From the NCBI RefSeq assembly GCF_964194025.1, contig NC_134471.1, positions 20,150,001-20,214,000 on the forward strand: a stretch of DNA of 64,000 nucleotides. Reading direction: 5' to 3'. Below are positions 2,539 through 35,551 of the stretch, in pieces. The stretch comes from Convolutriloba macropyga. Its lineage: Eukaryota. Both the position numbers and the translations under genes were made by a program. The notes below the pieces were generated by a model that saw nothing but the letters and a program-made list of their open reading frames with translations, had not been told where the DNA came from and searched no databases. Every line of letters begins with the position of its first letter. Position 1 is the first letter of the stretch.

Positions 2539-3332
2539 TCAATTACTGTGTAGCTCATATATGGGTCCAACCTTGATCCATTTATCAACTGGAAACTCGA
2601 TCTTGCTTTTGCCATTTCCGTCATTGTAATCCACAACTATTTTCTCAAGATACCAGTCGGGTGCAAAACCACAGGGTCCTTTTAAATTCAGATAGAGTTT
2701 CTTCAGCTTGCCCAAGTTACTGGGCAACATTTTGGGGTAATATCCAACTTTACCCGCCTCGAAATCGTTGCCTTTGGAGTCCAACCCGAGCCAATTGGAG
2801 TTCTTATTCTCCCCCACGACTTGGATGAAAACATTACAACTGGTCCCCGCCTTTTTGGGTCTTTACCATTATAGTGGCATGTCTCAGTGCTCATATAAGG
2901 TATATGAGCCCCCCCCCCAATAACTGCAAAATGTACCATAATGGACGCTTCTTACATTTTTAAGTGGACGATAATAGACAGTTCTTACCTTTTAAAACCT
3001 ACGACAACCGACTATTTGTCGTTTTAAAAACAACAAAAACACTGAAACTGCCGGCAAAAAACCCAAGGGTTTTGATCAGTTTGAACGAAGTAGATCGGAA
3101 GAAAATCGACGATTCCTTATGTGTGAAAATCATAAAATTCTCAACAAGGGCTATGATTCCGTGCGGAATTATAATGGGAAAGACTGGCCTTTTCTTTATC
3201 TCCTGTGTACACTTCGAACACATTTTCCAGTTTATCGCCACGCCGGTGATACGACGCAGTAATTGCAGCCAAACAAACCCATGTAGCAAAAAAAGTTGCC
3301 GCGTTCACTTTAATTGTATAAAAGAGCCCCAT
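2539..3332 (-). CDS. Putative secreted single PLAT/LH2-domain protein, copy 1 (exons 3332-3189 and 2850-2539; 151 aa if spliced)
   Basis: Joined product: MGLFYTIKVNAATFFATWVCLAAITAS...VFEVYTGDKEK|AGTSCNVFIQVVGENKNSNWLGLDSKGNDFEAGK...LGKLKKLYL...PDWYLEKIVV...FPVDKWI. It carries the PLAT motifs (V.TGD..AGT..V.I...G, DFE.G, LG.L, W.LE.I.V, FP..W) and a hydrophobic N-terminus. The junction needs a GC-AG intron, otherwise the gene is a TE-disrupted pseudogene. Confidence 0.72.
2857..3186. mobile_element. Non-autonomous TIR DNA transposon inserted in the PLAT gene (forms the putative intron 2851-3188)
   Basis: Ends GGGTCTTTACCATTATA ... TATAATGGGAAAGACTG, flanked by an 8-bp direct repeat gccttttt (2849-2856) / gccttttc (3187-3194). 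Same TIR as the elements at 4364-4489 and 25585-25704. Confidence 0.85.
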
Positions 3333-3577: not shown

Positions 3578-4160
3578 NNNNNNNNNNNNNNNNNNNNNNN
3601 NNNNNNNNNNNNNNNNNNNNNNNNNNNNNNNNNNNNNNNNNNNNNNNNNNNNNNNNNNNNNNNNNNNNNNNNNNNNNNNNNNNNNNNNNNNNNNNNNNNN
3701 NNNNNNNNNNNNNNNNNNNNNNNNNNNNNNNNNNNNNNNNNNNNNNNNNNNNNNNNNNNNNNNNNNNNNNNNNNNNNNNNNNNNNNNNNNNNNNNNNNNN
3801 NNNNNNNNNNNNNNNNNNNNNNNNNNNNNNNNNNNNNNNNNNNNNNNNNNNNNNNNNNNNNNNNNNNNNNNNNNNNNNNNNNNNNNNNNNNNNNNNNNNN
3901 NNNNNNNNNNNNNNNNNNNNNNNNNNNNNNNNNNNNNNNNNNNNNNNNNNNNNNNNNNNNNNNNNNNNNNNNNNNNNNNNNNNNNNNNNNNNNNNNNNNN
4001 NNNNNNNNNNNNNNNNNNNNNNNNNNNNNNNNNNNNNNNNNNNNNNNNNNNNNNNNNNNNNNNNNNNNNNNNNNNNNNNNNNNNNNNNNNNNNNNNNNNN
4101 NNNNNNNNNNNNNNNNNNNNNNNNNNNNNNNNNNNNNNNNNNNNNNNNNNNNNNNNNNNN
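3578..4160. other. Assembly gap (583 N)
   Basis: Run of N inside the PLAT tandem duplication. Confidence 1.
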
Positions 4161-4184
4161 GGGCGTTTTTAGTATAAAAATTAG

Positions 4185-4363
4185 GGGTCTTTCCGATAAT
4201 AACCCCCCCCCCCTGTTTAGTGGTCAGATAACCTATAGCCCCGCCCCCAATTATGGTAAATATACCAAAGTGGGGGCCAATAATTTCATGGGGGGATGGC
4301 GGGCTATATTGGGGGCCTAAAAAGAGTGAATATTGAGATATTAAATTGGGAACAGGTACTTAG
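4185..4363 (+). mobile_element. Partial element of the GGGTCTTTCCCATTATAGCCCC TIR family (one TIR only); paralogous copy at 6107-6283
   Basis: Begins gggtctttccgataataacccc...tagtggtcagataacctatagcccc, the same internal motif as 25585-25704. No right TIR seen. Confidence 0.6.
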
Positions 4364-4489
4364 GGGTCTTTCTCTTTCCCATTATAGCCCCCCCACGAAA
4401 ATATGGCCCCCCATTATGGAAAAATTACAAAGATTGGGGGGATATAGTTATCTGACCACTAAGCTGGGGGGCTATAATGGGAAAGACCC
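4364..4489. mobile_element. MITE (126 bp) of the GGGTCTTTCCCATTATAGCCCC TIR family with a perfect 8-bp TSD
   Basis: GTACTTAG (4356-4363) | gggtctttc...ccattatagcccc ... ggggctataatgggaaagaccc | GTACTTAG (4490-4497). Confidence 0.9.
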
Positions 4490-4685: not shown

Positions 4686-5499
4686 TCAACTACTCTGTAG
4701 CTCATATATGCGTGCGACATTGATCCATTTATCAATTGGAAACTCAATCTTGCTTTTGCCGTTTCCGTCATTGTAATCCACAACTATTTTCTCAAGATAC
4801 CAGTCGGGTGCAAAACCACAGGGTCCTTTTAAATTCAGATAGAGTTTCTTCAGCTTGCCCAAGTTACTGGGCAACATTTTGGGGTAATATCCAACTTTAC
4901 CCGCCTCGAAATCGTTGCCTTTGGAGTCCAACCCGAGCCAATTGGAGTTCTTATTCTCCCCCACGACTTGGATGAAAACATTACAACTGGTCCCCGCCTT
5001 GGTCCCCGCCTTTTTGGGTCTTTACCATTATAGTGGCATGTCTCAGTGCTCATATAAGGTATATGAGCCCCCCCCCCAATAACTGCAAAACTGCAAAATG
5101 TACCATAATGGACGCTTCTTACATTTTTAAGTGGACGATAATAGACAGTTCTTACCTATTAAAACCTACGACAACCGACAATTTGTCGTTTTAAAAACAA
5201 CAAAAACACTGAAACTGCCGGCAAAAAACCCAAGGGTTTTGATCAGTTTGAACGAAGTAGATCGGAAGAAAATCGACGATTCCTTATGTGTGAAAATCAT
5301 AAAATTCTCAACAAGGGCTATGATTCCGTGCGGAATTATAATGGGAAAGACTGGCCTTTTCTTTATCTCCTGTGTACACTTCGAACACATTTTCCAGTTT
5401 ATCGCCACGCCGGTGATACGACGCAGTAATTGCAGCCAAACAAACCCATGTAGCAAAAAAAGTTGCCGCGTTCACTTTAATTGTATAAAAGAGCCCCAT
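4686..5499 (-). CDS. Putative secreted single PLAT/LH2-domain protein, copy 2 (exons 5499-5356 and 5009[or 4997]-4686)
   Basis: Near-identical to copy 1 with open exons. It has a 12-bp in-frame duplication at the acceptor, and the C-terminus differs (FPIDKWINVARIYELQSS). Confidence 0.7.
5016..5353. mobile_element. TIR transposon / putative intron in PLAT copy 2
   Basis: Same TIRs and TSD (gccttttt 5008-5015 / gccttttc 5354-5361) as 2857-3186. Confidence 0.85.
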
Positions 5500-5806
5500 T
5501 TTGTAAACAAACTGCTTGGTGTGATTCACAATGTACACTCGAACTTGAGACAATAAGTTTTGAGCTGATAAATGAAAAATGGTTTGCTATAAACAATTGA
5601 ACCTTTTTTAATGCAATTTACCGCAAATCTGGAAATAAAAGTCACAATCTCCAAAAACATAGTTGATTTATGCGGAATCATCCATTTGAACATCTTTTAA
5701 TGATAAGGGCGCGCATAGGAATACATATTGTAAGAAGTAAGCTGGATCTATTCTGTAACATCCTCCTCCTCAACATGGATTTAAATTACTACGGCAATTT
5801 ACTCAT

Positions 5807-5921: not shown

Positions 5922-6287
5922 ATTACGTCACAATCTCCGAAATCGGAACCATCCATTATACGGAACCATCCATTTGAACATCTTTTAATGATAAGGGCGC
6001 GCAAAAGAAATACATATTGTAAGAAGTAAACTGGATCTATTCTGTAACATCCTCCTCCTACTACCCCAACCCCCAACTTAAAGGGCGTTTTTAGTGTAAA
6101 AATTAGGGGTCTTTACAATTATAGCCCCCCCCCCCCCGGCTTAGTAGTCAGATAACCTATAGCCCCCCAATCATGGTAAATATACAATAGTGGGGGGCAA
6201 TAAATTCATGGGGTACGGGGGGCTACATTGGGGGGCCAGAAAAGAGTGGATATTGAGATATTTAATTGGGAACAAGTACTTAGGGGT

Positions 6288-9200
6288 AATTTACTTTACC
6301 ATTCTCAAAATACACATATCCAATTTTTGCACAAAGAAATTCATCAAGACTAAGAATCCTAATCGATCTGCGACGAATCAAACATCTTCTTATACATGAG
6401 TAAGAGAACATTAACTTTGCAGTCCCGAAAAAGGCTGATGCAACTGCACACCTAGCTGGAAAGAGAATATTTGCCAAAATGGATTGCAGCCAAGCATATT
6501 TTTTTATTCAGTCGGCAGATGATTTGAGTACCCAATTACTAGCATTCAATTTTAGTGGACGTACTTTTGCCTTCAAACCTCAAGCTCACGGTCTCAGTTG
6601 CTCACCAACAGCATTCAGCTCCCGTGTTAGTAAACATTCGGAATCTGTAGTAGCAAATGACGAATGTTTTGTCTACTTTAATGAACGCGGTAGTCGTGCT
6701 ATAGATGGAAACTCTCTCACAGATAACTAAGAACATATTTTTGCGTGCATAGAAAAATTGGCTGAGAAACTCTTTATTGAAAAATGTCAACTTGGAACAA
6801 AGGAAATCAAATCTCTTGGTCAACCAATTACGGAACATGGAATATGCCCAAACCGTGAACAACCTTTAAAAACCTTTGAAAACTATCAAGATGCCTAAAA
6901 CGAATAAGCAAGTACGACGGCTTATCGTATTTGTCCAAAGTTTCCACAAATTCATAGCCAATATAGCTGTAAAGCTGTTACCATTCTTTAAACTTCTGAG
7001 AAATGACCAAGAATTTTTAATCAAAAAAGAACATCAAGAAAGCCTCGCTATATTGAAATCAGACTTCCCTCGCTCCTCTGAAATTTTCCTGAAAATGGCA
7101 AAATCTGGACGTCAATTAGTCATCGTCAGTGACGCGCGTTGTGTTGCCGCGGGATATATTCTTCTCATTGAAGACGAGGTTTGTCACTCTATTGACAAAC
7201 GTGAAAAACTGTATGCTCCAGTTGCTTTTGGTTCACGTCTCTTCTCACCCAATCAACTAAAATTTTCCATATACGTTAAGAAATCTTTCAATGTCTACTT
7301 TGCATTTGAAGCATTTGGACACTATGTATGGGGAGTAACTGACAAACCGATCATAGTTCTAACAGATAACAAAAGCGTTACGCGGGTTTTTTAAGCGAAA
7401 CAATTACCTGGTAGTTTGTGGAACGCATTAGACTAAGTTCTTGCATCTAAATTTCAGTTGGGACATTTTCCCGGTAAATGGCGCTGCCGATTATCTCTCC
7501 CGAATCTATGTTAACCCATCAACAAAATTTCAAATGAAGATCAAAAACGAAGTTCGCGTTCAGAACATTGAATTGAAAATTTTATCAACAAAGCCTGGAC
7601 ACACTCCCCACAGAAATATATCAACCAAACTTTATAAGCACAACGACAACAATGACCATCAATAGCGTAGAAGAAAACATTCTAGCAAATAATGCTTCTC
7701 GAAGACAATACATTGTATTCAATGGCTGAAGAAAATTCAATTGATAAACTCATTTTGGATTTTAAATTAGAGTCACTAGAAATTCGCTGAACAAACAACT
7801 GACATAGATAATGCTAAGACGATACGATGGATTGCGAAACGACAGAAAATAAAATCCAACACAACTTATCCATCGTATGATTCACAAATATATCACAAGC
7901 AAATGAATAGAATTGTTCTTGTAAATCTTGTACTGTACAGAAAATTCATTGATCACACAAGAAAAGTAGTTGCAAAATAACTTGTACTACCGGAAACCTT
8001 AAGAGAGGGACTTCAATACCAAATACAAGATTCTAAGATCAAAGGCCATTTGGGTATACAAAAAAACTATCACTGAGTTCCAAAGAAAAAATTACTTTCC
8101 TGGTTTCATTGAATTTCTGAGTGTATATTTCAACAACTGTTTATCTTCTCTTGCTTCAAAATCGCCAAAACGTGAAATAGTTACACCGCTACTGAACCCG
8201 GTAAGCTTGATCACAAGCAAAAGACTTACTTCAAGTTGATGTTGTTGGCAAAAATCAGGTGGTTAATCCTTCGTGGTAACAGCAATGGATGCATTTTCCA
8301 AATACCTATTTGCCCAACCAATAACCTTGCCCTCAGCTGAGGGTATTACAAAAGTCTTAAGGAACTGATTACTACAACAATCATATATTCCACTGTCAAT
8401 TTGAACTGATTAAAGATCAGCGTTCAAAGTCCAACTCATAAGTGAAGTAGCCAGAATGCTTGAAGTAAAATGAAACCACGCATCTGTAAAACACGCACAA
8501 ACAATTGATCTTTTGGAGCGAACGCATGGACCACAGAAACGGTACTTGAAAATTTACGAAAACACAGAAAACATGACTGGCATAAATACATTGACTTGGC
8601 TGTTTTTCAACAAAACACACAGCCCTAGTTGGTCCACCTACTCTAATCTCTTAAAGGAGAGTACCATTGAATCCAATTGATCTCCGATTTAAAAAAAAAC
8701 GTTACCAAGGTTCTCATCAAAATATGATTACGTAAGCGAAATCCAAACCAAAAAGATGGATCATTTTTCAGATGTGAAAGAACCACTAATAATGTCTTTA
8801 AAAAAACTGCGAATACTATGACAGGAAAACAAAAACTGTTCCACTAAAACAACGACCAATATTGCATGCTTCTTCATCCAAAAATTTCAGTTAAATATGA
8901 CAAAAATGGAAACCTAGAATGCAAACGGGTAAGCGTACATAGGATAGAAAAAGTCCTTACAAAAAGAGAGCATATGGAAAGCATAATAATTCCAAAATTT
9001 CATCAAATGAAGTAACAGAAAACACAACACCTAATATAAACTCACCAGAAAGCCCTTCATCATATAAGGTGCCGCCTTCATCTGTATAATCTCCAATTCA
9101 AAAAGACAATGCTCAAGCCATATCCAGAATTAGCAGTGCACTGACAACAAAATATTTTGACCCGAAAGCCCCGGTTTAAAACCTTTGTAATTTTCTGAAA
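6288..9200 (+). pseudogene. Ty3/Gypsy pol pseudogene: reverse transcriptase, RNase H, integrase (5'-truncated; no gag or protease seen)
   Basis: RT: IFAKMDCSQAYF...TFAF...GLSCSPTAFS...CFVYFNE (decayed YxDD). RNase H: LVIVSDA...PVAFGSRLFS...IIVLTDNKS. Integrase: GHLGIQKT...C..C zinc finger (best preserved in the 4th repeat copy), LQVDVVG, MDAFSKYLFA, LERTHG. RT-RH-IN order, with many stops and frameshifts. Confidence 0.92.
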
Positions 9201-10080
9201 ATCAAAAAAACAACAACAACAGCAACATATACAACAACAAGCACAACAGCCTTCAACAAGCCCATCAGTTCCTCTGTCAGTTTTAGGACCACATGTATCT
9301 AATAAAACATCTCGTTACCGAAGGCAACGAAAACAAACCCATTTCTATCAATCGGAAAAGTAAATATTACTTTACTTCATATCACCATTGCTTCACCCTC
9401 ATAACTATAAAAACTTATTATAATCTTGACCTTCTCACCGTCATTTACCCTAGCTGTTTTAATTTCCATTACTTTTTTTGATCTCAAACTTTAATTGTTT
9501 TACAATTTGTTCATTGAATCGTTAGTACCATTATATATCAAGACGTTAGCCTAATATTGCATATACACACCGCGTATTCCATACTATAGCGAGTAGCTAT
9601 GCAGACTACTGAGCACTGTTTCCATCAGTGACTAAGGAAATAGTGATTCCTAAATTTTCAAACAAGTAGTCAAAAAATTTCATCCTATTGCCATTCTTAA
9701 TACATTAAGGGAAAAAAATGTGAAAGTTATGCAAAAACAAAACCTTTTTAAAAACTCTAATTGCGAGATATTGACCAACTCATTGCCGGCTTTCGATTGA
9801 TACATATTTCAATTACTCAACTCAATACAGAAAACAGGGGTAAATGACTTGAGATTCCATACCATATATTCTTTGACTGCATTTATTTAGTCTGCAGTTT
9901 TCATTTTGCGGCCATTTTGGAATCAATTGCCCATGCATGACGAATGACTCAAGCTCTTACAAGCTTCCATGGCATGCTGAGCCACCACACAGACGAATGT
10001 TATTTTATTAGTGGAATAACAAATCCTCCACGAATGTTTCTTTATATGTTTTTGCCACTGTAGAGTAAGGTTAAAAATAA

Positions 10081-10300
10081 TCTCACTTCCTTTTACTTTA
10101 TTTTCTCACTTTCTTTTCTCACTTTTTTTCTCACTTTCTTTTCTCACTTTCTTTTCTCACTTTCTTTTTTCAGTTTCTTTTCTCACCTTCTTTTCTCACT
10201 TTTTTTCTCACTTTCTTTTCTTACTTTCTTTTCTCACTCTCTTTTCTCACTTTCTTTTCTCGCTTTCTTTTCTCACTTTGTCTTTTCACTTTTCCTTTCT
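10081..10300. repeat. Pyrimidine-rich ~14-bp minisatellite (TTTCTTTTCTCACT)n at junction 1/2
   Basis: Tandem tttcttttctcact variants directly visible. Confidence 0.95.
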
Positions 10301-13160
10301 TTATTAATCTATGTTATTATTTCTCCCGAATATCGGTGCTGCCGATTATCTCTCCCGAATCTATGTTAACCCATCAAAAAAATTTCAAATGAAAATCAAA
10401 AACGAAGTTCCCGTTCAGAACATTGAATTGAAAATTTTATCAACAAAGCCTGGACACAGTCCCCACAGAAATATCTCAACCAAACTTTATAAGCACAACA
10501 ACAATGACCATCAATAGCGTAGAAGAAGGCATTCTAGCAAGTATGCTTCTCGAAGACAATACGTTGTATTCAATGGCAGAAAAAAATTCATTTGATGAAC
10601 TCACTTTGGAATTTAAATTAGAGCCACTGGAAATTGCCGCTGAACAAACAACTGACCAGGATAATGCTGAGACGATACGATGGATTGAACAGAAAATAAA
10701 ACCCAACACAACTTATTCAGCGTATGATTCACAAAGATATCACAAGCAAATGAATAGAATTGTTCTTGTAAATCGCGTATTGTACAGAAAATTCCTTGAT
10801 CATACAGGAAAAGTAGTTGCAAAATAACTTGTACTACCGGAAACCTTAAGAGAGGGACTTCAATACCAAATACAAGATTCTAAGATCAAACGCCATTTGG
10901 GTATACAAAAAAACTATCACTGAGTTCCAAAGAAAAAATTACTTTCCTGGTTTCATTGAATTTCTGAGTGTATATTTCAACAACTGTTTATCTTCTCTTG
11001 CTTCAAAATCGCCTTTCCAAGTGACTGACTTCAAGTTGGTGTTGCTGGCCAATTACCAAAATCAGGTGGTTATTCCTTCGTGGTAACAGCAATGGATGTA
11101 TTTTCCAAATACCTGTTTGCCCAACCAATCACATTGCCCTCAGCTGAGGGTTTTACAAAAGTCTTAAAGAATTGATTTTTACAACAATCATATATTCCAC
11201 TGTCAATTTGAACTGATAAAAGATCAGCGTTCAAAATCAAACTCAGAAGTGAAGTATTCCGAATGCTTGAAGTAAAATGAAACCACGCATCTGTCAAACA
11301 CGCACAAACAATTGGTCTTTTGGAGCGAACGCATGGACCTCTGAAACGGTACTTGAAAATTTAAGAAAACACAGAAAACATGACTGGCATAAATACATTG
11401 ACTTGGCTGTTTTTCAACAAAACGCAATGTATCACACAGCCCTAGGAGTTTCACCTACTCTAATCTCTCAAAGGAGAGTACCATTGAAGCCAAATGATCT
11501 TCGATTCAAAAAATAGCTACCAGATCAAAATATGATTACGTAAGCGAAATCCAAACCAAAAAGATGGATCACTTTTCAGATGTGAAAGAACCCCTAGCAA
11601 CGTCTTTAAACGAAACTGCGAATACTATGACAGGAAAGCAAAAACTGTTCGGCTAAAACAACGACCAATATTGCACGCTTCTTCGTCCAAAAATTTCAAA
11701 TGAATATGACAAAAATGGAAACCTAGAATGCAAATGGGTAGGCGTACATAGGATAGAAAAAGTCCTCACAAAAAGCAACTATTTGAATCGAATAACAAAT
11801 ACAAATAATACTCAGATCGTCCACCCTGTACTCTTGAAACCATTTCAGTCACAATTCCAAATCGAAGATTCGCGAATAATTAGCAATGAAATTTTGCGAA
11901 GATCCAATGATTCCAGAGGCTTTGAAGGGGCCACAAATTTTTGACTCTTAAGTTGAGAAACTTATTTGTACACTAATTGATACAAGGAGTACAGCTCAAG
12001 TGAAACTTGGACTGATAGAAAAGAAACTTGATAAAAAAAAGAAGGAGAGCATACGGAAAGCATAAAAATTCCAAAACTTCATCAAATGAAGTAACAGAAA
12101 ACACAAATCCTAATATAAACTCAGCAGAGAGCCCATCATCTTATAAGACGCTGCCTCCATCTGTATAATCTGCAATTCAAAAAGACAGTGCTCAAGCCAT
12201 ATCCAGAATTAGCAGCGCACTGACAACAAAATATTCTGACCCGAAAACCCCGGTATAAAATCTTTGTAATTTTCTGAAAATCAAAAAAACAACAACAACA
12301 GCAACATATACAACAACAAGCTCATTAGCCTTCAACAAGCCCAACAGTTCTTCTGTCAGTTTTAGGACCACATGTATCTAATAAAATATCTCGTTATCGA
12401 AGACAACGAAAACAAACCCATTTCTATCAATCGGAAAAGTAAATATTTCTTTACTTCATATCATCATTGCTTCACCCTCATAACTATAAAAACTTATTAT
12501 AATCTTGACCTTCTCACCGTCATTTACCATAGCTGTTTTAATTTCCATTAGTTTTTTCGATCTCAAACCTTAATTGTTTTACCATTTGTTCATTGAAACA
12601 TTAGTACCATTATATATCAAGACGTTAGCCTAATATTGCATATACACACCGCGTGCTCCATACTATAGTGATTAGCTATGCAGACTACTGAGCACTGCTT
12701 CCATCAGTGCCTGAGGAAATAGTGATTCCTAAATTTTTAAACAAGTAGTCAAAAAAATTCATCCTATTGCCATTCATAATACATTGAGGAAAAAAATGTG
12801 AAAGTTATGCAAAAACAAAACCTTTTTAAAAACTCTAATTGCGAGATATTGACCAACTCATTGCCGGCTTTCGATTGATACATATTTCAATTACTCAACT
12901 CAATACAGAAAACAGGGGTAAATGACTTGAGATTCCATACCATATATTCTTTGACTGCATTTATTCAGTCTGCAGTTTTCATTTTGCGGCCATTTTGGAA
13001 TCAATTGCCCATGCATGACGAATGACTCAAGCTCTTACAAGCTTCCATGGCATGCTGAGCCACCACACAGACGAATGTTATTTTATTAGTGGAATAGCAA
13101 ATCCTCCACGAATGTTTCTTTATATGTTTTTGCCACTGTAGAGTAAGGTTAAAAATAATT

Positions 13161-13456
13161 TCACTTCCTTTTACTTTATTTTCTCACTTTCTTTTCTCAC
13201 TTTTTTTCTCACTTTCTTTTCTCTCTTTCTTTTCTCACTTTCTTTTTTCAGTTTCTTTTCTCACTTCCTTTTCTCACTTTTTTTTCTCACTTTCTTTTCT
13301 CACGTTCTTTTCTCACTTTCTTTTTTCAGTTTCTTTTCTCACTTTCTTTTCTCACTTTTTTTCTCACTTTCTTTTCTCACTTTCTTTTCTCACTTTCTTT
13401 TCTCACTTTCTTTTCTCGCTTTCTTTTCTCACTTTGTCTTTTCACTTTTCCTTTCT
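13161..13456. repeat. (TTTCTTTTCTCACT)n minisatellite at junction 2/3
   Basis: Same motif, longer array than at 10081-10300. Confidence 0.95.
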
Positions 13457-16322
13457 TTATTAATCTATGTTATTATTTCTCCCGAATATGGGCGCTGCCG
13501 ATTATCTCTCCCGAATCTATGTTAACCCATCAAAAAAATTTCAAATGAAAATCAAAAACGAAGTTCCCGCTCAGAACATTGAATTGAAAATTTATCAACA
13601 AAGCCTGGACACAGTCCCCTCAAAAATATCTCAAACAAACGTTATAAGCACAACAACAATGACCATCAATAGCGTAGAAGAAGGCATTCTAGCAAATATG
13701 CTTCTCGAAGACAATACGTTGTATTCAATGGCTGAAAAAAATTCAATTGATGAACTCAATTTGGATTTTAAATTAGAGTCACTAGAAATTCCCGCTGAAC
13801 AAACAACTGACATAGATAATGCTTAAGACGATACGATGGATTGAGAAACGACAGAAAATAAAACCCAACACAACTTATCCATCGTATGATTCACAAATAT
13901 ATCACAAGCAAATGAATAGAATTGTTCTTGTAAATCTTGTACTGTACAGAAAATTCATTGATCACACAAGAAAAGTAGTTGCAAAATAACTTGTACTACC
14001 GGAAACCTTAAGAGAGGGACTTCAATACCAAATACAAGATTCTAAGATCAAACGCCATTTGGGTATACAAAAAAACTATCACTGAGTTCCAAAGAAAAAA
14101 TTACTTTCCTGGTTTCATTGAATTTCTGAGTGTATATTTCAACAACTGTTTATCTTCTCTTGCTTCAAAATCGCCTTTCCAAGTGACTGACTTCAAGTTG
14201 GTGTTGCTGGCCAATTACCAAAATCAGGTGGTTATTCCTTCGTGGTAACAGCAATGGATGTATTTTCCAAATACCTGTTTGCCCAACCAATCACATTGCC
14301 CTCAGCTGAGGGTTTTACAAAAGTCTTAAAGAATTGATTTTTACAACAATCATATATTCCACTGTCAATTTGAACTGATAAAAGATCAGCGTTCAAAATC
14401 AAACTCAGAAGTGAAGTATTCCGAATGCTTGAAGTAAAATGAAACCACGCATCTGTCAAACACGCACAAACAATTGGTCTTTTGGAGCGAACGCATGGAC
14501 CTCTGAAACGGTACTTGAAAATTTAAGAAAACACAGAAAACATGACTGGCATAAATACATTGACTTGGCTGTTTTTCAACAAAACGCAATGTATCACACA
14601 GCCCTAGGAGTTTCACCTACTCTAATCTCTCAAAGGAGAGTACCATTGAAGCCAAATGATCTTCGATTCAAAAAATAGCTACCAGATCAAAATATGATTA
14701 CGTAAGCGAAATCCAAACCAAAAAGATGGATCACTTTTCAGATGTGAAAGAACCCCTAGCAACGTCTTTAAACGAAACTGCGAATACTATGTCAGGAAAG
14801 CAAAAACTGTTCGGCTAAAACAACGACCAATATTGCACGCTTCTTCGTCCAAAAATTTCAAATGAATATGACAAAAATGGAAACCTAGAATGCAAATGTG
14901 TAGGCGTACATAGGATAGAAAAAGTCCTCACAAAAAGCAACTATTTGAATCGAAAAACAAATACAAATAATACTCAGATCGTACACCCTGTACACTTGAA
15001 ACCATTTCAGTCACAATTCCAAATCGAAGATTCGCGAATAATTAGCAATGAAATTTTGCGAAGATCCAATGATTCCAGAGGCTTTGAAGGGGCCACAAAT
15101 TTTTGACTCTTAAGTTGAGAAACTTATTTGTACACTAATTGATAACAGGAGTACAGCTCAAGTGAAATTTGGACTGATAGAAAAGCAACTTGATATAAAA
15201 AAGAAGGAGAGCATACGGAAGGCATAAAAATTCAAAAACTTCATCAAATGAAGTAACAGAAAACACAAATCCTAATATAAACTCACCAGAAAGCCCATCA
15301 TCTTATAAGACGCTTCCTCCATCTGTATAATCTGCAATTCAAAAAGACAATGCTCAAGCCATATCCAGAATTAGCAGCGCACTGACAACAAAATATTCTG
15401 ACCCGAAAGCCCCGGTATAAGATCTTTGTAATTTTCTGAAAATCAAAAAAACAACAACAACAGCAACATATACAACAACAAGCTCATTAGCCTTCAACAA
15501 GCCCATCAGTTCTTCTGTCAGTTTTAGGACCACATGTATCTAATAAAAAATCTTGTTATCGAAGACAACGAAAACAAAGCCATTTCTATCAATCGGAAAA
15601 GTAAATATTACTTTACTTCATATCATCATTGCTTCACCCTCATAACTATAAAAACTTATTATAATCTTGACCTTCTCACCGTCATTTATCATAGCTGTTT
15701 TAATTTCCATCAGTTTTTTCGATCTCAAACCTTAATTGTTTTACCATTTGTTCATTGAAACATTAGTACCATTATATATCGAGACGTTAGCCTAATATTG
15801 CATATACACACCGCGTATTCCATACTATAGCGAGTAGCTATGCAGACTACTGAGCACTGCTTCCATCAGTGCCTGCGAAAATAGTGATGCCTAAATTTTC
15901 AAACAAGTAGTCAACGAAATTCATCCTATTGCCATTCTTAATACATTAAGGGAAAAAAATGTGAAAGTTATGCAAAAACAAAGCCTTTTTAAAAACTCTA
16001 ATTGCGAGATATTGACCAACTCATTGCCGGCTTTCGATTGATACATATTTCAATTACTCAACTCAATACAGAAAACAGGGGTAAATGACTTGAGATACCA
16101 TACCATATATTCATTGACTGCATTTATTTAGTCTGCAGTTTTCATTTTGCGGCCATTTTGGAATCAATTGCCCATGCATGACGAATGACTCAAGCTCTTA
16201 CAAGCTTCCATGGCATGCTGAGCCACCACACAGACGAATGTTATTTTATTAGTGGAATAACAAATCCTCCACGAATGTTTCTTTATATGTTTTTGCCACT
16301 GTAGAGTAAGGTTAAAAATAAT

Positions 16323-16618
16323 CTCACTTCCTTTTACTTTATTTTCTCACTTTCTTTTCTCACTTTTTTTCTCACTTTCTTTTCTCACTTTCTTTTCTCA
16401 CTTTCTTTTTTCAGTTTCTTTTCTCACTTTCTTTTCTAACTTTTTTTTCTCACTTTCTTTTCTCACGTTCCTTTCTCACTTGCTTTTTTCAGTTTCTTTT
16501 CTCACTTTCTTTTCTCACTGTTTTTTCGCTTTCTTTTCTCACTTTTTTTTCTCACTTTCTTTTCTCACTTTCTTTTCTCGCTTTCTTTTCTCACTTTGTC
16601 TTTTCACTTTTCCTTTCT
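16323..16618. repeat. (TTTCTTTTCTCACT)n minisatellite at junction 3/4
   Basis: Same motif and same flanks as the other two arrays. Confidence 0.95.
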
Positions 16619-19600
16619 TTGTTAATCTATGTTATTATTTCTCCCGAATATCGGCGCTGCCGATTATCTCTCCCGAATCTATGTTAACCCATCAAAAAAA
16701 TTTCAAATGAAAATCAAAAACGAAGTTCCCGTTCAGAACATTGAATTGAAAATTTTATCAACAAAGCCTGGACACAGTCCCCTCAGAAATATCTCAACCA
16801 AACTTTATAAGCACAACAACAATGACCATCAATAGCGTAGAAGAAGGCATTCTAGCAAATATGCTTCTCGAAGACAATACGTTGTATTCAATGGCTGAAA
16901 AAAATTCATTTGATGAACGCACTTTGGATTTTAAATTAGAGCCACTAGAAATTGCCGTTGAACAAACAACTGACCAGGATAATGCTGAGACGATACAATG
17001 GATTGAGAAACGAGGGACTTTAATACCGAATACAAAATTCTAAGATCAAAGGCCATTTGGGTATACAAAAAAACTATCACTGAGTTCCGTAGAAAATATT
17101 ACTTTCCTGGTTTTATTGAATTTCTGATTGTATATTTTAACAACTGTTTATCTTGTCTTGCTTCAAAATCGCCAAAACGTGAAATAGTTACACCGCCATT
17201 GAACCTGGTAAGCTTGATCACAAATTTTCCAAGTGACTGACTTCAAGTTGGTGTTGCTGGCCAATTACCAAAATCAGGTGGTTATTCCTTCGTGGTAACA
17301 GCAATGGATGTACTTTCCAAATACCTGTTTGCCCAACCAATCACATTGCCCTCAGCTGAGGGTATTACAAAAGTCTTACAGAATTGATTTTTACAACAAT
17401 CATATATTCCACTGTCAATTTGAACTGATAAAAGATCAGCGTTCAAAATCAAACTCAGAAGTGAAGTATTCCGAATGCTTGAGGTAAAATTAAACCACGC
17501 ATCTGTCAAACACGAACAAACAATTGGTCTTTTGGAGCGAACGCATGGACCTCTGAACTTGAAAATTTAAGAAAACACAGAAAAATGACTGGCATAAATA
17601 CATTGACTTGGCTGTTTTTCAACAAAACGCAATTTATCACACAGCCCTAGGAGTTTCACCTACTCTAATCTCTCAAAGGAGAGTACCATTGAAGCCAAAT
17701 AATCTTCGATTCAAAAAATAGCTACCAGATCAAAATATGATTACGTAAGCGAAATCCAAACCAAAAAGATGGATCACTTTTCAGATGTGAAAGAACCCCT
17801 AGCAACGTCTTTAAACGAATCTGCGAATACTATGACAGGAAAGCAAAAACTGTTTGGCTAAAACAACGACCAATATTGCACGCTTCTTCGTCCAAAAATT
17901 TCAAATGAATATGACAAAAATGGAAACCTAGAATGCAAATGTGTAGGCGTACATAGGATAGAAAAAGTCCTCACAAAAAGCAACTATTTGAATCGAAAAA
18001 CAAATACAAATAATACTCAGATCGTCCACCCTGTACACTTGAAACCATTTCAGTCACAATTCCAAATCGAAGATTCGCGAATAATTAGCAATGAAATTTT
18101 GCGAAGGTCCAATGATTCCAGAGGCTTTGAAGGGGCCACAAATTTTTGACTCTTGAGTTGAGAAACTTATTTGTACACTAATTGATAACAGGAGTACAGC
18201 TCAAGTGAAATTTGGACTGATAGAAAAGCAACTTGATATAAAAAAGAAGGAGAGCATACGGAAGGCATAAAAATTCCAAAACTTCATCAAATGAAGTAAC
18301 AGAAAACACAAATCCTAATATAAACTCACCAGAAAGCCCATCATCTTATAAGACGCTTCCTCCATCTGTATAATCTGCAATTCAAAAAGACAATGCTCAA
18401 GCCATATCCAGAATTAGCAGCGCACTGACAACAAAATATTCTGACCCGAAAGCCCCGGTATAAGATCTTTGTAATTTTCTGAAAATCAAAAAAACAACAA
18501 CAACAGCAACATATACAACAACAAGCTCATTAGCCTTCAACAAGCCCATCAGTTCTTCTGTCAGTTTTAGGACCACATGTATCTAATAAAATATCTTGTT
18601 ATCGAAGACAACGAAAAAAAACCCATTTCTATCAATCGGAAAAGTAAATATTACTTTACTTCATATCATCATTGCTTCACCCTCATAACTATAAAAACTT
18701 ATTATAATCTTGACCTTCTCACCTTCGTCATTTACCATAGCTGTTTTAATTTCCATTAGTTTTTTCGATCTCAAACCTTAATTGTTTTACCATTTGTTCA
18801 TTGAAACATTAGTACCATTATATATCGAGGCGTTAGCCTAATATTGCATATACACACCGCGTATTCCATACTATAGCGAGTAGCTATGCAGACTACTGAG
18901 CACTGCTTCCATCAGTGCCTGAGAAAATAGTGATGCCTAAATTTTCAAACAAGTAGTCAAAGAAATTCATCCTATTACCATTCTTAATACATTACGGGAA
19001 AAAATGTGAAAGTTATGCAAAAACAAAACCTTTTTTAAAAACTCTAATTGCGAGATGTTGACCAACTCATTGCCAGCTTTCGATTGATACATATTTCACT
19101 TACTCAACTTAATACAGAAAACAGGCGTAAATGACTTGAGATCCCTTATCTTATACGCTTTGACTGCAGATGTATAGTCTGCAGTTTTCATTTTGGAATC
19201 AATTGCTCCATGCATGACGAATGACTCAAGCCCTTATAAGCTTCTATGGCATGCTGAGCCGCCACACAGACGAATGTTATTTTATTAGGAGAATTACAAA
19301 CCCTCCACGATGGTTTCTTTATATGTTTTTGCCAGTGTAGATTAGTGTTAAAAATAAAGAACATTATTTTTACCCTTGTTCTACAGCTTGCTTTTCTAGA
19401 TACATATTGCGTTGATTTGGCAAATTAAAGCTTTGCTTTCTTCTTTTACTTGCTCCAAGATAACCGTTTTTCAGGCCACGTTTAGAATAATTACTTGTTG
19501 TATAGATTACTCCAGACTCAATGAAAGCATGCAAATGTTCAGTAAGACCACTGACTTCAACACCTCGGGATTTATCAATTGACTTGCTTACTAAAAGGGA

Positions 19601-21419
19601 GCCTTGAATGAAAGCCTAACTTAACAAAGATTTAAATCCTTCATGAGGCATGCCACTGCCATAACTTCGCAATGAACGTTGAACTCGAAGCGAATTAATA
19701 TTAGAAGCTCTCCAAACCCATCACATGGAAACACCAGCTGTTAAAGTATAAGAGCATGCGCAGAAGGACTAAGTTGGAACAAAATTATTTCTGGCTCGGG
19801 AATATGAAACTTCACAGCCTGATTTTCCTGGTCAGTTTGCACCGCACTCGGTAAGTTTCATAAAATCTTCAACAAATCAAAATCTTTATTCAAAGTGGAG
19901 TAGTGCAAACCTGGAGTACATATGATTTTTTATTCTATTTAAAGTAACGGAAATAGAATATTCTCCTCCAGTCCACCATCAGTCCACCACGCATTAAATT
20001 GAACAATCGTATAACATTTTCATTTCTTTAAAGATTGTGGAATTTGAATATGCATTCGGACATTCCAACGGGCCATATAAATTCGAGATTCTCTTTCTTT
20101 AGATCTACATTAAGAGAGAAGATAAAAATAATTGTCTGCTTATTTTCGAAAATCTAATGAATTCTCAACATTATCAAGAAAAATTATAAAATTTGCTAAT
20201 GACAACAAATTATGTTTTCGCACCACAATTGGTAGTTTTACCCAGTTGCTAAAGACGTTGCTTGCATAGCCTGATAAGGATATTAGATTTACCGCTTACA
20301 ACCACGTTTTTGCTCCATTTTGGTCAACAACTCTTACCGATTGCCACCCAAGTTATTTAACTTTTCTGGATTACGATAATCTGGGTTAATCTGAATTTTT
20401 CTATACGATCATGAATAGCAAAAAGGTTAACATTTGGCCTTAATTGATGTCTTGCATCTTTAAAAAAAATTATCTCTTACTCATTTCAATTATAACTAGA
20501 AAATTAATTGAAAAAGAAATTAATGTTGCAATTAATTGTCACGGTAGGTTGAAACAACAAAAGCTATTCCGCAAGGCCACAGACAAACACATAAGGCCGA
20601 GCAAACCAGCACAATACAAATAATACCGGACCAATGGGGGCCACTACCAACTTCAAGGCCACCATTGCAGGGATACATCATTCTTGGCACATTGTAGACA
20701 ATCGAGTCACCTTCTTACAACACAGTGCGATCTCTGCAGCACAATAAATTATTGTCACTGTCCAACTGAATAATTTTAAAAGGCGCAACCAAGGCAAGAA
20801 GAAGCAGAAAGTAAACGCTCATGATTCAACCTTGAAAAATACATTACCTGATTATCCGGTGAATTTATCATTTCAAACATTACATTTGAAGAGCTGAAAA
20901 GAACTAAAACAAATATTTTCTTTCATTTGACAAAATAAATTTAATAAGCCTCTTTAAGTAAACTTTACTTAAACTTTATTACATTGACGTCAACCGACAG
21001 TCAGCACCAAAAAAGATGCGACATCAATTCTCAGCTTCATTTATGATAAACAGCCTGCAGCGAAATTTTATTAAAGCACTTGAATTACTTTTAAAAAAAT
21101 TACCACCAAAATTTAATTCTTCTTGAAGCTATGTTTATTAAACAAAGAGTCTGTAAAGTCTCGCCGCTTCACCTTTAAAAAGTTCAAACTTTGTAGGAGG
21201 ACCAGATTTTGTATATTTTCATTCTGGAGGTTATTATTATAATTTTTTTTATCTCACGTTTTCTACAGGTTGCTCAATGTAGCTTTTTCTGGCCGACTTG
21301 ATTGCGGTGTAAGCCCCATAACAAAAAAGATTTTGACCTAGATCACCTTCCTATATGTTGTCTGAATCAAGTACAAACTTGACAATTCCAATTAATTTCA
21401 ACAGCAAATACCTATCATA

Positions 21420-25584: not shown

Positions 25585-25704
25585 GGGTCTTTCCCATCAT
25601 TGCCCCCCCCCCCAGGCTAGTGGTCAGATAACCTATAGCCCCCCCCCCCCCCCCCCCAATCATGGTAATTATACCATAATGGGTGGCTATAATGAAAATG
25701 ACCC
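25585..25704. mobile_element. MITE (120 bp) of the GGGTCTTTCCCAT TIR family
   Basis: gggtctttcccatcattgcccc...ggctataatgaaaatgaccc, with the shared internal motif tagtggtcagataacctatagcccc. TSD decayed (aaaagatg / gagaaatg). Confidence 0.8.
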
Positions 25705-34475: not shown

Positions 34476-35551
34476 ACTATCTGTATCAAAACTTTTTGGT
34501 ATGAAAATGGAAACTGGACTCCAGGAGCTGTCAGATGATAATGCTCATTTTTCTCTACGATACAAAAATAAAAAGATGCAAATTTGCCAGAATTCTAAAG
34601 AAAAAATAGCCGCCTTCGCATATTTATTTCCCCATTTTGAAAAAGTGTTGGAACAGTAAGAATTGAGTGAACATACATGACAATGGGCTGCGTCAAAGCT
34701 CATTGAGTCCAGATAAATTTGTCTTTTACCGACTCTTGCTGGTATGAAATTCAAAGAGAACAAGAATTGCTGGTTTATCTTGCCTCCCCCCCCCCCCCCC
34801 CCCCCCCCCCAATGAGGACATCTGGAGAAGTCAAGCCCTCAAAGCGTGTGTATAATGTTTGATCGATTTGTTTGAATCGAAAGAAAAATCTTTTCATTTA
34901 ATTATTGTTTTATCAGTTATAAAATTCTAGCTAATATGAATTGTGATATCTAATGCAGGAAGAGAAAATTTATGAAAATTATGTTAGCTTGTCTCAGTAT
35001 CAGTAGTAACTTTGAAAAATATTTATTGCTTTTTGCTTGTGCCGAAAATGTGATTTTCTGGCCAATGAAATGCTGCGAAAATTAATAGCCATTCAAAGAG
35101 CTCCAAAATATTAAATGCTGCTTGCAAAATAAAATATAAAGTCGAAGCCAATATTATTACAAGAAATCGAGCAAATTTTACAGGTTAGAGTAAAGAATTC
35201 ATATATTCAATTCAAATTCAAAGTTACTGTGCCTGCTTACTGAGTTACTACTACTACTGCTACACTGATTTATAGTCTTAAGATTGTTTATTCCAAAACC
35301 ATTTCGAACAAGCCGCCTATTTAGATACTCGTTAAGAGCTAGTTGAACCTCTGTTGAAAATCCACCACAACAAAACAACCTTTCCTATCTATTTCAGATA
35401 CTTATTGCATGGTGTGAGGTTTTCTTTCATTTCCTTATTTACTCGCTGAGTATCAGCTTAAAAAGCTTTCTAAACTGTATTTACAAGAAGCCATCTTTAC
35501 TTCCATTTGCCAATTTTGAGCCAGTTAGCTTTTTCTACTGGGAGTCTCGAA

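What the first reader, a model, noticed from the sequence alone, without database searches (positions are those of the whole stretch)
2849..3194. DNA transposon that can be spliced out perfectly as a GC-AG intron (introner-like) in a PLAT-domain gene
Seen: on the minus strand the gene reads ...GGA GAT AAA GAA AAG|GC-CAGTCTTTCCCATTATA...TATAATGGTAAAGACCC-AAAAAG|GCG GGG ACC. The insert has TIRs and an 8-bp TSD (GAAAAGGC/AAAAAGGC). Because the target contains AG|GC, the first TSD copy gives a donor (AAG/GCCAGT, near the GC-AG consensus AG/GCAAGT) and the second gives an AG acceptor. Removing 3188-2851 (338 nt) restores the conserved PLAT motif VYTGDKEK-AGTS with no scar. Both exons are free of stops and frameshifts in both gene copies, even though the TIRs and TSD have already mutated. 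At the donor end the family terminus GGGT has become CAGT. Established: introner elements create spliceosomal introns from TIR transposons by using TSD-derived splice sites. Inference: this is such an intron gain in an animal, with both sites taken from the TSD. Caveats: there is no polypyrimidine tract, +3 is C, and the acceptor is AAG.
Basis: partly seen in the sequence, partly recalled or inferred. Interest (0 to 1): 0.88.

Follow-up and report, generated by a model that had tools for sequence, protein, structure and literature searches.

The report
Transposon-born GC-AG intron in acoel gene
A 330-bp transposon landed inside the coding exon of a small secreted PLAT-domain gene of the acoel worm Convolutriloba macropyga, and it is annotated, and apparently kept by selection, as a GC-AG intron whose splice sites come from the duplicated target site, a rare kind of intron birth in animals.

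Summary
On the minus strand, a 330-bp element with 17-nt terminal inverted repeats (TIRs) and an 8-bp target-site duplication (TSD) splits a PLAT-domain reading frame. Removing 3188..2851 (338 nt, GC...AG) restores it without a scar.

The window is Convolutriloba macropyga (acoel). NCBI RefSeq already models this exact intron. Isoform X2 uses the same GC donor and an AG inside the TIR 10 nt upstream, which shifts the frame. X2 cannot come from protein homology, so I infer RNA-seq support for its junction. I saw no reads myself: the only runs I could lay were DNA.

New evidence comes from the other haplotype (L002). It holds an allele about 3% diverged with the frame and both splice sites intact. 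It also holds an old paralogue with the same element at the same site, which has lost donor and acceptor and gained a stop codon. Between functional copy and paralogue, dN/dS is 0.32 (p about 0.001), so selection acted after the insertion.

The window's "second copy" is a gene-conversion chimera and is not independent evidence. Whether this is a proliferating introner family is untested. The element's own GT and AG cannot give in-frame removal, so this looks like accidental intronisation made possible by AG|GC in the target. Verdict: real, a new member of a known kind.

The parts
3189..3332 (-). Exon 1 coding part (48 codons): start codon, hydrophobic signal-like N-terminus, and the first PLAT strand ending ...VYTGDKEK
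   Evidence: Identical to residues 1-48 of RefSeq isoform X1 (P0002).
2851..3188 (-). 338-nt GC-AG intron of isoform X1, made of the 330-bp element plus one TSD copy. Donor AAG|GCCAGT, acceptor AAAAAG|GC.
   Evidence: The gene call spans 794 nt, which is 456 nt of coding sequence plus 338.
2861..3188 (-). 328-nt alternative intron of isoform X2: same GC donor, acceptor GGTAAAG|ACCC inside the TIR. It adds 10 nt and shifts the frame. From the main start codon it gives a 56-aa truncated product.
   Evidence: joining 3223..3189 to 2860..2539 translates exactly to P0001.
2539..2850 (-). Exon 2 coding part (103 codons plus stop): the rest of the PLAT domain, starting AGTSCNVF
2857..3186 (.). 330-bp non-autonomous TIR DNA transposon (MITE-like). 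Its interior has no other copy in the window or in L002 apart from the gene copies.
2857..2873 (.). TIR at the acceptor side (GGGTCTTTACCATTATA on the + strand)
3170..3186 (.). TIR at the donor side (CAGTCTTTCCCATTATA on the - strand). The family terminus GGGT is changed to CAGT here.
   Evidence: The paralogue L2 has CGGT at this place.
2849..2856 (.). TSD copy at the acceptor side (minus strand AAAAAGGC). It supplies the AG.
3187..3194 (.). TSD copy at the donor side (minus strand GAAAAGGC). It supplies AG|GC of the donor.
4686..5499 (-). Tandem copy 2: exon 1 at 5356-5499, intron at 5010-5355 (element at 5016-5353), exon 2 at 4686-5009. It carries an in-frame 12-nt duplication of the acceptor junction and an 8-nt duplication in the intron. 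Its 5' part is identical to copy 1 and its 3' end resembles the pseudogene L2. No gene call is on record here.
4363..4489 (.). Short intergenic MITE of the same TIR family with a perfect 8-bp TSD (GTACTTAG). It fixes the family terminus as GGGTC and the TSD length as 8.

Best explanation
A non-autonomous TIR DNA transposon (330 bp, 8-bp TSD) inserted into what was the single coding exon of a small, probably secreted, one-PLAT-domain gene of Convolutriloba macropyga. It landed between the codons for K48 and A49.

The duplicated target GAAAAGGC contained AG|GC. The upstream TSD copy and the first element bases therefore form a GC-type 5' splice site (AAG|GCCAGU), and the downstream TSD copy supplies the 3' AG (AAAAAG|GC). 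The major (U2-type) spliceosome then removes the element plus one TSD copy, 338 nt in all, and restores the pre-insertion reading frame. This is isoform X1.

An AG carried by the TIR 10 nt upstream competes and gives a frame-shifted by-product, isoform X2.

The insertion predates a tandem duplication. One daughter copy stayed functional and is under purifying selection. The other lost its splice sites and decayed.

Shown: the transposon anatomy, the exact frame restoration, the identity to the RefSeq models, the shared insertion in allele and paralogue, and dN/dS below 1.
Inferred: that RNA-seq junction reads underlie the RefSeq models, and the relative use of the two acceptors.
For: - Transposon anatomy and family.
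- Exact restoration of the PLAT profile, positions 3-106 with no indel and about 10 bits gained.
- RefSeq isoforms X1 and X2 reproduced exactly from window coordinates. X2's first 15 residues come from another frame, so a protein alignment cannot have produced it. Neither protein name carries a 'LOW QUALITY PROTEIN' flag.
- The other haplotype (L002) is collinear with the window. Its allele L2b is about 3% diverged, with an intact frame, both splice sites unchanged, and 5 synonymous against 5 non-synonymous changes. That divergence fits the published heterozygosity of 3.65% (PMC13650328).
- The paralogue L2 carries the same element at the same site. Its donor GC is now GG, its acceptor and the AGTS codons are deleted, and TAC has become TAA. 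This shows what decay looks like at this locus.
- Functional copy against L2: dN/dS 0.32, from 15.5 synonymous and 21.5 non-synonymous differences, binomial p = 0.0012. Exons are 8.5% diverged without indels in the functional lineage. The intron is 13.6% diverged with several indels, and the flanks 15-24%.
- Exon 1 alone has dN/dS 0.31, which supports the X1 frame rather than the X2 frame.
- No empty-site allele appears in the contigs of four DNA runs.
Against: - I saw no RNA junction reads. The four runs I could lay are genomic DNA, with even depth across exon, intron and intergenic sequence. A second search listed no RNA run. The protein collection holds no transcript-derived copy of the product.
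- The splice signals are weak: a GC donor with C at +3, no polypyrimidine tract, and an AG 10 nt upstream of the productive acceptor that may win often.
- X1 might rest on protein homology and not on reads.
- The dN/dS estimate rests on 37 differences, with no outgroup, and gene conversion occurs at this locus.
Confidence: 0.8

Rival explanations
1. Transposon-disrupted pseudogene. The insertion killed the gene, and the RefSeq intron is an annotation device: a GC-AG gap placed by a protein-guided aligner to keep the PLAT frame open.
For: No junction reads were seen. The splice signals are weak. The sister copy L2 with the same insertion is clearly a pseudogene. Copy 2, nearly identical to copy 1, has no gene call.
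Against: Isoform X2 cannot come from protein homology. dN/dS is 0.32 after the insertion, p about 0.001. The frame and both splice sites are intact in two haplotypes about 3% apart, while the intron gained indels. The intact lineage stands in contrast with the decayed L2.
Confidence: 0.12
2. Member of a specialised, proliferating introner family. The TIR family would routinely create introns in C. macropyga genes, for instance through a target preference for AGGY, and this would be one of many.
For: Unverified first-stage notes on other pieces of the same genome describe the same pattern of TIR, 8-bp TSD and splice sites from the TSD: s1-263043, s1-234595, s1-224104. The host is marine, and Gozashti 2022 found introners enriched in aquatic organisms (PMC9860276).
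Against: The other family copies in this window are intergenic, with TSDs GTACTTAG and AAAATTAG and no AGGY. The element's own GT (GG|GTCTTT) and AG (AAAG|ACCC) would leave 14 nt, which shifts the frame. The interior of this copy has no other copy in about 74 kb. Its 31-mer depth in DNA runs is at most about 4.5 times single copy, so there is no recent burst. A scan of the window found no other such structure.
Confidence: 0.25
3. Only the X2 junction is used. The functional product would be the 118-aa protein without a signal peptide, or an exon-2-only product, and exon 1's main frame would be irrelevant.
For: The upstream AG (2862-2861) is the first AG after plausible branch sites, and spliceosomes usually take the first one. 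X2 is a RefSeq model.
Against: Exon 1 shows dN/dS 0.31 in the X1 frame, while X2 uses only 35 nt of exon 1 in another frame. X2 lacks the first PLAT strand, profile positions 3-12.
Confidence: 0.08

Closest known systems
Introners that take both splice sites from the insertion site (Florenciella type; Gozashti et al. 2022, PMC9860276, Fig. 2E as described)
   Same: A DNA-transposon insertion in an exon becomes a spliceosomal intron. Both splice dinucleotides lie in duplicated or target sequence, so removal leaves the mRNA length unchanged.
   Different: Those are families with many near-identical intron copies in protists. Here one insertion is documented, multiplied only by gene duplication, in an animal, with a GC donor. 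Family-wide intron creation was not shown.
Micromonas and Aureococcus introner elements (Huff, Zilberman and Roy 2016, from memory; review PMC11282704)
   Same: Short MITE-like elements with TIRs and TSDs. One splice site is co-opted from the TSD.
   Different: Those elements carry one splice site themselves, have 3-bp (Micromonas) or 8-bp (Aureococcus) TSDs, and number in the thousands. This family's own GT and AG cannot give in-frame removal.
MITE-derived non-canonical introns of the tunicate Fritillaria borealis (Henriet et al. 2019, as summarised in PMC11282704)
   Same: An animal in which introns show TIRs and TSDs at exon-intron borders, meaning MITE insertions removed by the spliceosome.
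   Different: Fritillaria uses AG-AC and AG-AT ends and an altered spliceosome across the genome. Here the ends are GC-AG, which an ordinary U2-type spliceosome handles, and only one locus is shown.
Single transposon insertions spliced from exons, such as maize Ds and dSpm alleles (Wessler; Purugganan and Wessler; recalled from memory). The review notes that 'singular introns of transposon origin' are reported in many eukaryotes (PMC11282704).
   Same: A one-off exonic insertion is rescued by cryptic splice sites at or near the element ends, with alternative and imprecise products alongside.
   Different: Those are recent mutant alleles, usually spliced imprecisely. This one is fixed, older than a gene duplication of about 13% divergence, removed exactly, and followed by purifying selection.

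Membership tests
Introner / introner-like element | The intron sequence is a transposable element (TIRs, TSD, related copies elsewhere). | tested here: met
   17-nt TIRs, an 8-bp TSD matching 7/8, and the same termini on other copies with their own TSDs.
Introner / introner-like element | The element is removed from the transcript by splicing. | tested here: inconclusive
   RefSeq isoforms X1 and X2 contain the intron and dN/dS is below 1 after the insertion. But I saw no reads.
Introner / introner-like element | Splice sites are supplied by the element and/or the TSD, so that the mRNA is restored. | tested here: met
   AG|GC comes from TSD copy 1 and AG from TSD copy 2. Donor positions +3 to +6 come from the element terminus. 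Removing 338 nt restores the PLAT frame exactly.
Introner / introner-like element | A family in which many similar copies form introns in different genes. | tested here: inconclusive
   No further case in 64 kb. The other copies are intergenic and the interior is unique locally. The genome-wide test is not possible with these tools. Three unverified notes elsewhere in this genome point the same way.
MITE (miniature inverted-repeat element) | Short, non-coding, with TIRs, a TSD of fixed length, and multiple copies. | tested here: met
   330 bp. An 8-bp TSD on two independent copies. 10 TIR matches against 0.17 expected.
Superfamily with 8-bp TSD (hAT, P, Merlin) | A matching transposase and superfamily-specific termini. 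| not testable with these tools
   No autonomous copy is in the window or in L002. The terminus GGGTC is not the usual hAT YARNG (from memory). The label 'Merlin-like' in note s1-263043 was not checked.
U2-type GC-AG intron | GC at +1/+2, AG at the 3' end, and an otherwise strong donor consensus (AG|GCAAGT). | tested here: met
   The donor AAG|GCCAGT matches at every position except the defining C at +2 and a C at +3. The acceptor is AAG|G. No polypyrimidine tract is present.
PLAT/LH2 domain protein (PF01477) | A Pfam match above the gathering score. | tested here: met
   54.9 bits against a cut-off of 23, residues 39-142. Relatives are LOXHD1-like proteins at about 30-35% identity.

The most novel reading that the evidence does not exclude
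Convolutriloba macropyga, and perhaps acoels more widely, may carry many introns born from MITEs with 8-bp TSDs. In these, both splice sites would come from an AG|GY in the duplicated target. This would be a passive 'survivor' route to intron gain that needs no specialised element. It would be the first introner-like system in Xenacoelomorpha and the third animal group after those in Gozashti 2022.
Probability: 0.3. Interest if true: 0.8.

Novelty: new member of a known kind. Interest (0 to 1): 0.55.

Why it matters
Recent, datable intron births are rare in animals. Gozashti et al. 2022 found introners in only two animal groups among 835 animal and plant genomes. My searches found no paper on transposon-born introns in acoels.

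This locus shows the process unusually clearly, with four states side by side:
- the transposon scars, still legible;
- a functional lineage with both splice sites kept;
- a sister copy that lost the sites and decayed;
- a competing acceptor inside the TIR that shows the cost of the arrangement.

It also suggests a general rule that can be tested. Any transposon with a long TSD can become an exact intron if the target contains AG|GY. Poly(A) RNA-seq for the species is public, so the claim can be settled in an afternoon.

Tried and rejected
- **Reads (the single allowed call).** The four runs offered as 'rna ?' behave as genomic DNA: even depth of about 25-30 over exon, intron and intergenic sequence, and millions of short contigs totalling about 1.1-1.4 Gb. 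They say nothing about splicing. They do show both haplotypes and no empty site.
- **Second run search.** I restricted it to the library word RNA-Seq. None was listed.
- **Transcript-derived proteins.** The word-index search found only the RefSeq cluster. The exhaustive HMMER search found only distant multi-PLAT proteins, plus P0142. P0142 is a read-through ORF call on the other haplotype, and that is what led to L002.
- **Window-wide scan for TIR plus 8-bp TSD.** No further intron-like case turned up.
- **'Two copies equals two independent witnesses'.** Rejected, because copy 2 is a conversion chimera.
- **Donor terminus 'improved by selection'.** Only partly tenable. One of the two changes predates the duplication and is shared with the pseudogene.
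- **RNA fold of the intron.** The ends pair partly, with z = -2.7. This is compatible with TIR pairing bringing the sites together, but it decides nothing.
- **Bacterial promoter and terminator scan.** Irrelevant for an animal gene.

Full report
**1. The observation**

- Exon 1 ends ...GGAGATAAAGAAAAG at 3189.
- The insert begins GCCAGTCTTTCCCATTATA at 3188 and ends ...TATAATGGTAAAGACCCAAAAAG at 2851.
- Exon 2 begins GCGGGGACC at 2850.

The insert has terminal inverted repeats (TIRs) at 2857-2873 and 3170-3186. It has an 8-bp target-site duplication (TSD), GCCTTTTT and GCCTTTTC on the + strand, a 7/8 match.

The TIR motif is not a chance palindrome.
- It occurs 10 times in the window against 0.17 expected.
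- A 127-bp copy at 4363-4489 has a perfect 8-bp TSD, GTACTTAG. This fixes the family terminus as GGGTC and the TSD length as 8.

A numerical scan of the whole window for a TIR of at least 13/16 plus a TSD of at least 7/8 returned this element, its duplicate and two poor pairs. Offset controls gave 0-2.

Joining 3332..3189 to 2850..2539 gives a 151-codon open frame.
- Its PLAT match runs over profile positions 3-106 without an indel.
- It scores 54.9 bits, against 44.6 for exon 2 alone.
- Left unspliced, the frame stops after 63 codons.

**2. What and where it is**

A protein search with exon 2 found one cluster: two RefSeq proteins of the acoel Convolutriloba macropyga. The locus is on chromosome record OZ077302.1 of assembly GCA_964194025.3.

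I reproduced it from window coordinates.
- **Isoform X2** (XP_075244111.1, 118 aa) begins MCSKCTQEIKKRPKK and then continues AGTS... It is reproduced exactly by joining 3223..3189 to 2860..2539. That means the same GC donor, an AG inside the TIR (GGTAAAG|ACCC) 10 nt upstream of the productive acceptor, and a start codon in another frame.

A frame-shifted N-terminus cannot come from a protein alignment. I therefore infer, from how NCBI's pipeline builds alternative isoforms (my own knowledge), that RNA-seq junctions underlie at least X2 and hence the GC donor. The genome note confirms that poly(A) RNA-seq of the species exists (PMC13650328). From the main start codon, the X2 junction would give a 56-aa truncated product. 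X2 is therefore most simply a by-product of acceptor competition.

**3. Direct RNA evidence: not obtained**

- The four runs found for this stretch were laid once, which is the cap. They have even depth over exon, intron, promoter and downstream sequence, and they are millions of short contigs totalling about 1.1-1.4 Gb per run. They are genomic DNA.
- They show no 338-nt skip.
- A second search restricted to RNA-Seq libraries listed none.
- No transcript-derived copy of the protein is in the collection.

**4. Evidence from the other haplotype**

The exhaustive HMMER search returned, besides distant LOXHD1-like proteins, a 63-aa ORF call (P0142). It is 75% identical to exon 1 and runs on into the element. 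Its contig, L002, is collinear with the window at about 90-93% identity and holds two gene units.

*L2b (L002 about 6642-7440), the allele of the window's copy 1.*
- It is about 3% diverged, which fits the published heterozygosity of 3.65%.
- Its frame is intact and both splice sites are unchanged.
- The exons carry 10 substitutions (5 synonymous, 5 non-synonymous, mostly conservative) and no indel.
- The intron carries 13 substitutions and two indels.
- Its variants are seen in the DNA runs.

*L2 (L002 5001-5830), at the position of the window's copy 2.*
- It carries the same element at the same site, so the insertion predates the tandem duplication.
- It is a pseudogene. Its donor GC has become GG, a deletion removed the acceptor and the AGTS codons, and TAC has become TAA in exon 2.
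- Its diagnostic junction is present in all four DNA runs (tables 5 and 5c).

*Copy 1 against L2.*
- dN = 0.063 and dS = 0.196, so dN/dS = 0.32.
- This comes from 15.5 synonymous and 21.5 non-synonymous differences, with a binomial p of 0.0012 against neutrality.
- One of the two lineages is a pseudogene, so the ratio overstates dN/dS in the functional lineage.
- Exon 1 alone gives 0.31, which supports the X1 frame.
- Exons are 8.5% diverged. The intron is 13.6% diverged with several indels, including a roughly 100-nt one. The flanks are 15-24% diverged.

Selection on the coding frame therefore continued after the insertion. That requires the 338 nt to be removed at least part of the time.

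**5.

- **Copy 2 is not independent.** The window's copy 2 (4686-5499) is about 99.7% identical to copy 1 from upstream of exon 1 to about position 4765. From there on it resembles L2. It is a gene-conversion product or an assembly chimera beside the N run. Its 12-nt and 8-nt duplications do not appear in the DNA-run contigs, and it has no gene call.
- **The donor-side terminus changed in two steps.** Element position 1 changed G to C in both copy 1 and L2, so before the duplication. The +4 G-to-A change is found only in the functional lineage. L2 instead lost the GC. This is suggestive of selection but rests on one case.

**6. Mechanism**

The target GAAAAGGC contained AG|GC. After duplication, the upstream copy plus the element's first bases give AAG|GCCAGU, and the downstream copy gives AAAAAG|GC.

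Any two splice sites at equivalent offsets in the two TSD copies remove exactly the element plus one TSD. For this family that is the only exact solution. Its own GT (GG|GTCTTT) and AG (AAAG|ACCC) would leave 14 nt behind and shift the frame.

By my arithmetic, a random 8-mer contains AGGY about 4% of the time. The simplest reading is an accidental intronisation that survived because this particular target made exact removal possible. It does not look like an element specialised for making introns.

The predicted RNA fold pairs the two ends partly (z = -2.7). That may help bring the sites together.

**7. Comparison with what is known**

The mechanism matches introners that take both sites from the insertion site, the Florenciella type of Gozashti 2022. 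In animals it resembles the MITE-derived introns of Fritillaria. As a single rescued insertion it resembles the spliced Ds and dSpm alleles of maize (recalled from memory).

On membership of the 'introner' class:
- transposon origin and splice-site supply are met;
- splicing is supported only indirectly;
- the defining family-wide property is untested.

Within this window the other copies are intergenic. The interior of this copy is locally unique and at most about 4.5 times single-copy depth in DNA runs.

Three unverified first-stage notes on other pieces of this genome describe the same pattern. They are leads only. My searches found no paper on introners or intron gain in acoels.

**8. Verdict**

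The finding is a real feature and the reading is essentially right. It is already present, though uninterpreted, in RefSeq. It is a new member of a known kind. Interest is moderate for the single locus and would be high if the genome-wide pattern holds.

Noticed in passing
window 35507-37708 (+): A 733-codon single-exon ORF encodes a Frizzled receptor (Frizzled membrane region E = 1e-106, plus the Fz domain). It sits in a local GC peak of about 46%.
   Followed up: partly
window about 7400-20400; L002 1-4785: A tandem array with a period of about 2.85-3.1 kb lies upstream of the PLAT genes. A reverse-transcriptase RNase H fragment ORF sits beside it at 6876-7394. The array is present in both haplotypes at about 86-90% identity.
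   Followed up: partly
window 4686-5770 (copy 2) and the N run 3578-4160: Copy 2 is a mosaic of copy-1-like 5' sequence and pseudogene-like 3' sequence. It has a 12-nt duplication of the acceptor junction (giving AGTKAGTS) and an 8-nt duplication in the intron. Neither was seen in four DNA runs. It is either a gene conversion or an assembly chimera next to the N stretch. I did not read the letters under the Ns.
   Followed up: partly
L002 5001-5830: This is the old paralogue with the same transposon. It is now a pseudogene: the donor is lost, the acceptor and four codons are deleted, TAC has become TAA, and about 100 nt are duplicated inside the element. It serves as a natural control for neutral decay at this locus.
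   Followed up: yes
window 10057-10325: A 13-nt tandem repeat, CTCACTTTCTTTT, of about 20 units.
   Followed up: no
window 2602-2817 in DNA runs: The exon 2 contig has about 2.6 times the word depth of the flanking single-copy contigs in run X1 (76 against 29). Exon 1 does not show this, although copies 1 and 2 are identical in both regions. The copy number of the array in other individuals is unresolved.
   Followed up: no
window 4161-4489, 6083-6303, 25585-25704: Short G/C-run-rich MITEs of about 120-300 bp share the TIR GGGTCTTTCCCATTATAG. They are partly nested and all intergenic. Their TSDs, GTACTTAG and AAAATTAG, end in AG directly before the element's GGGTC.
   Followed up: partly
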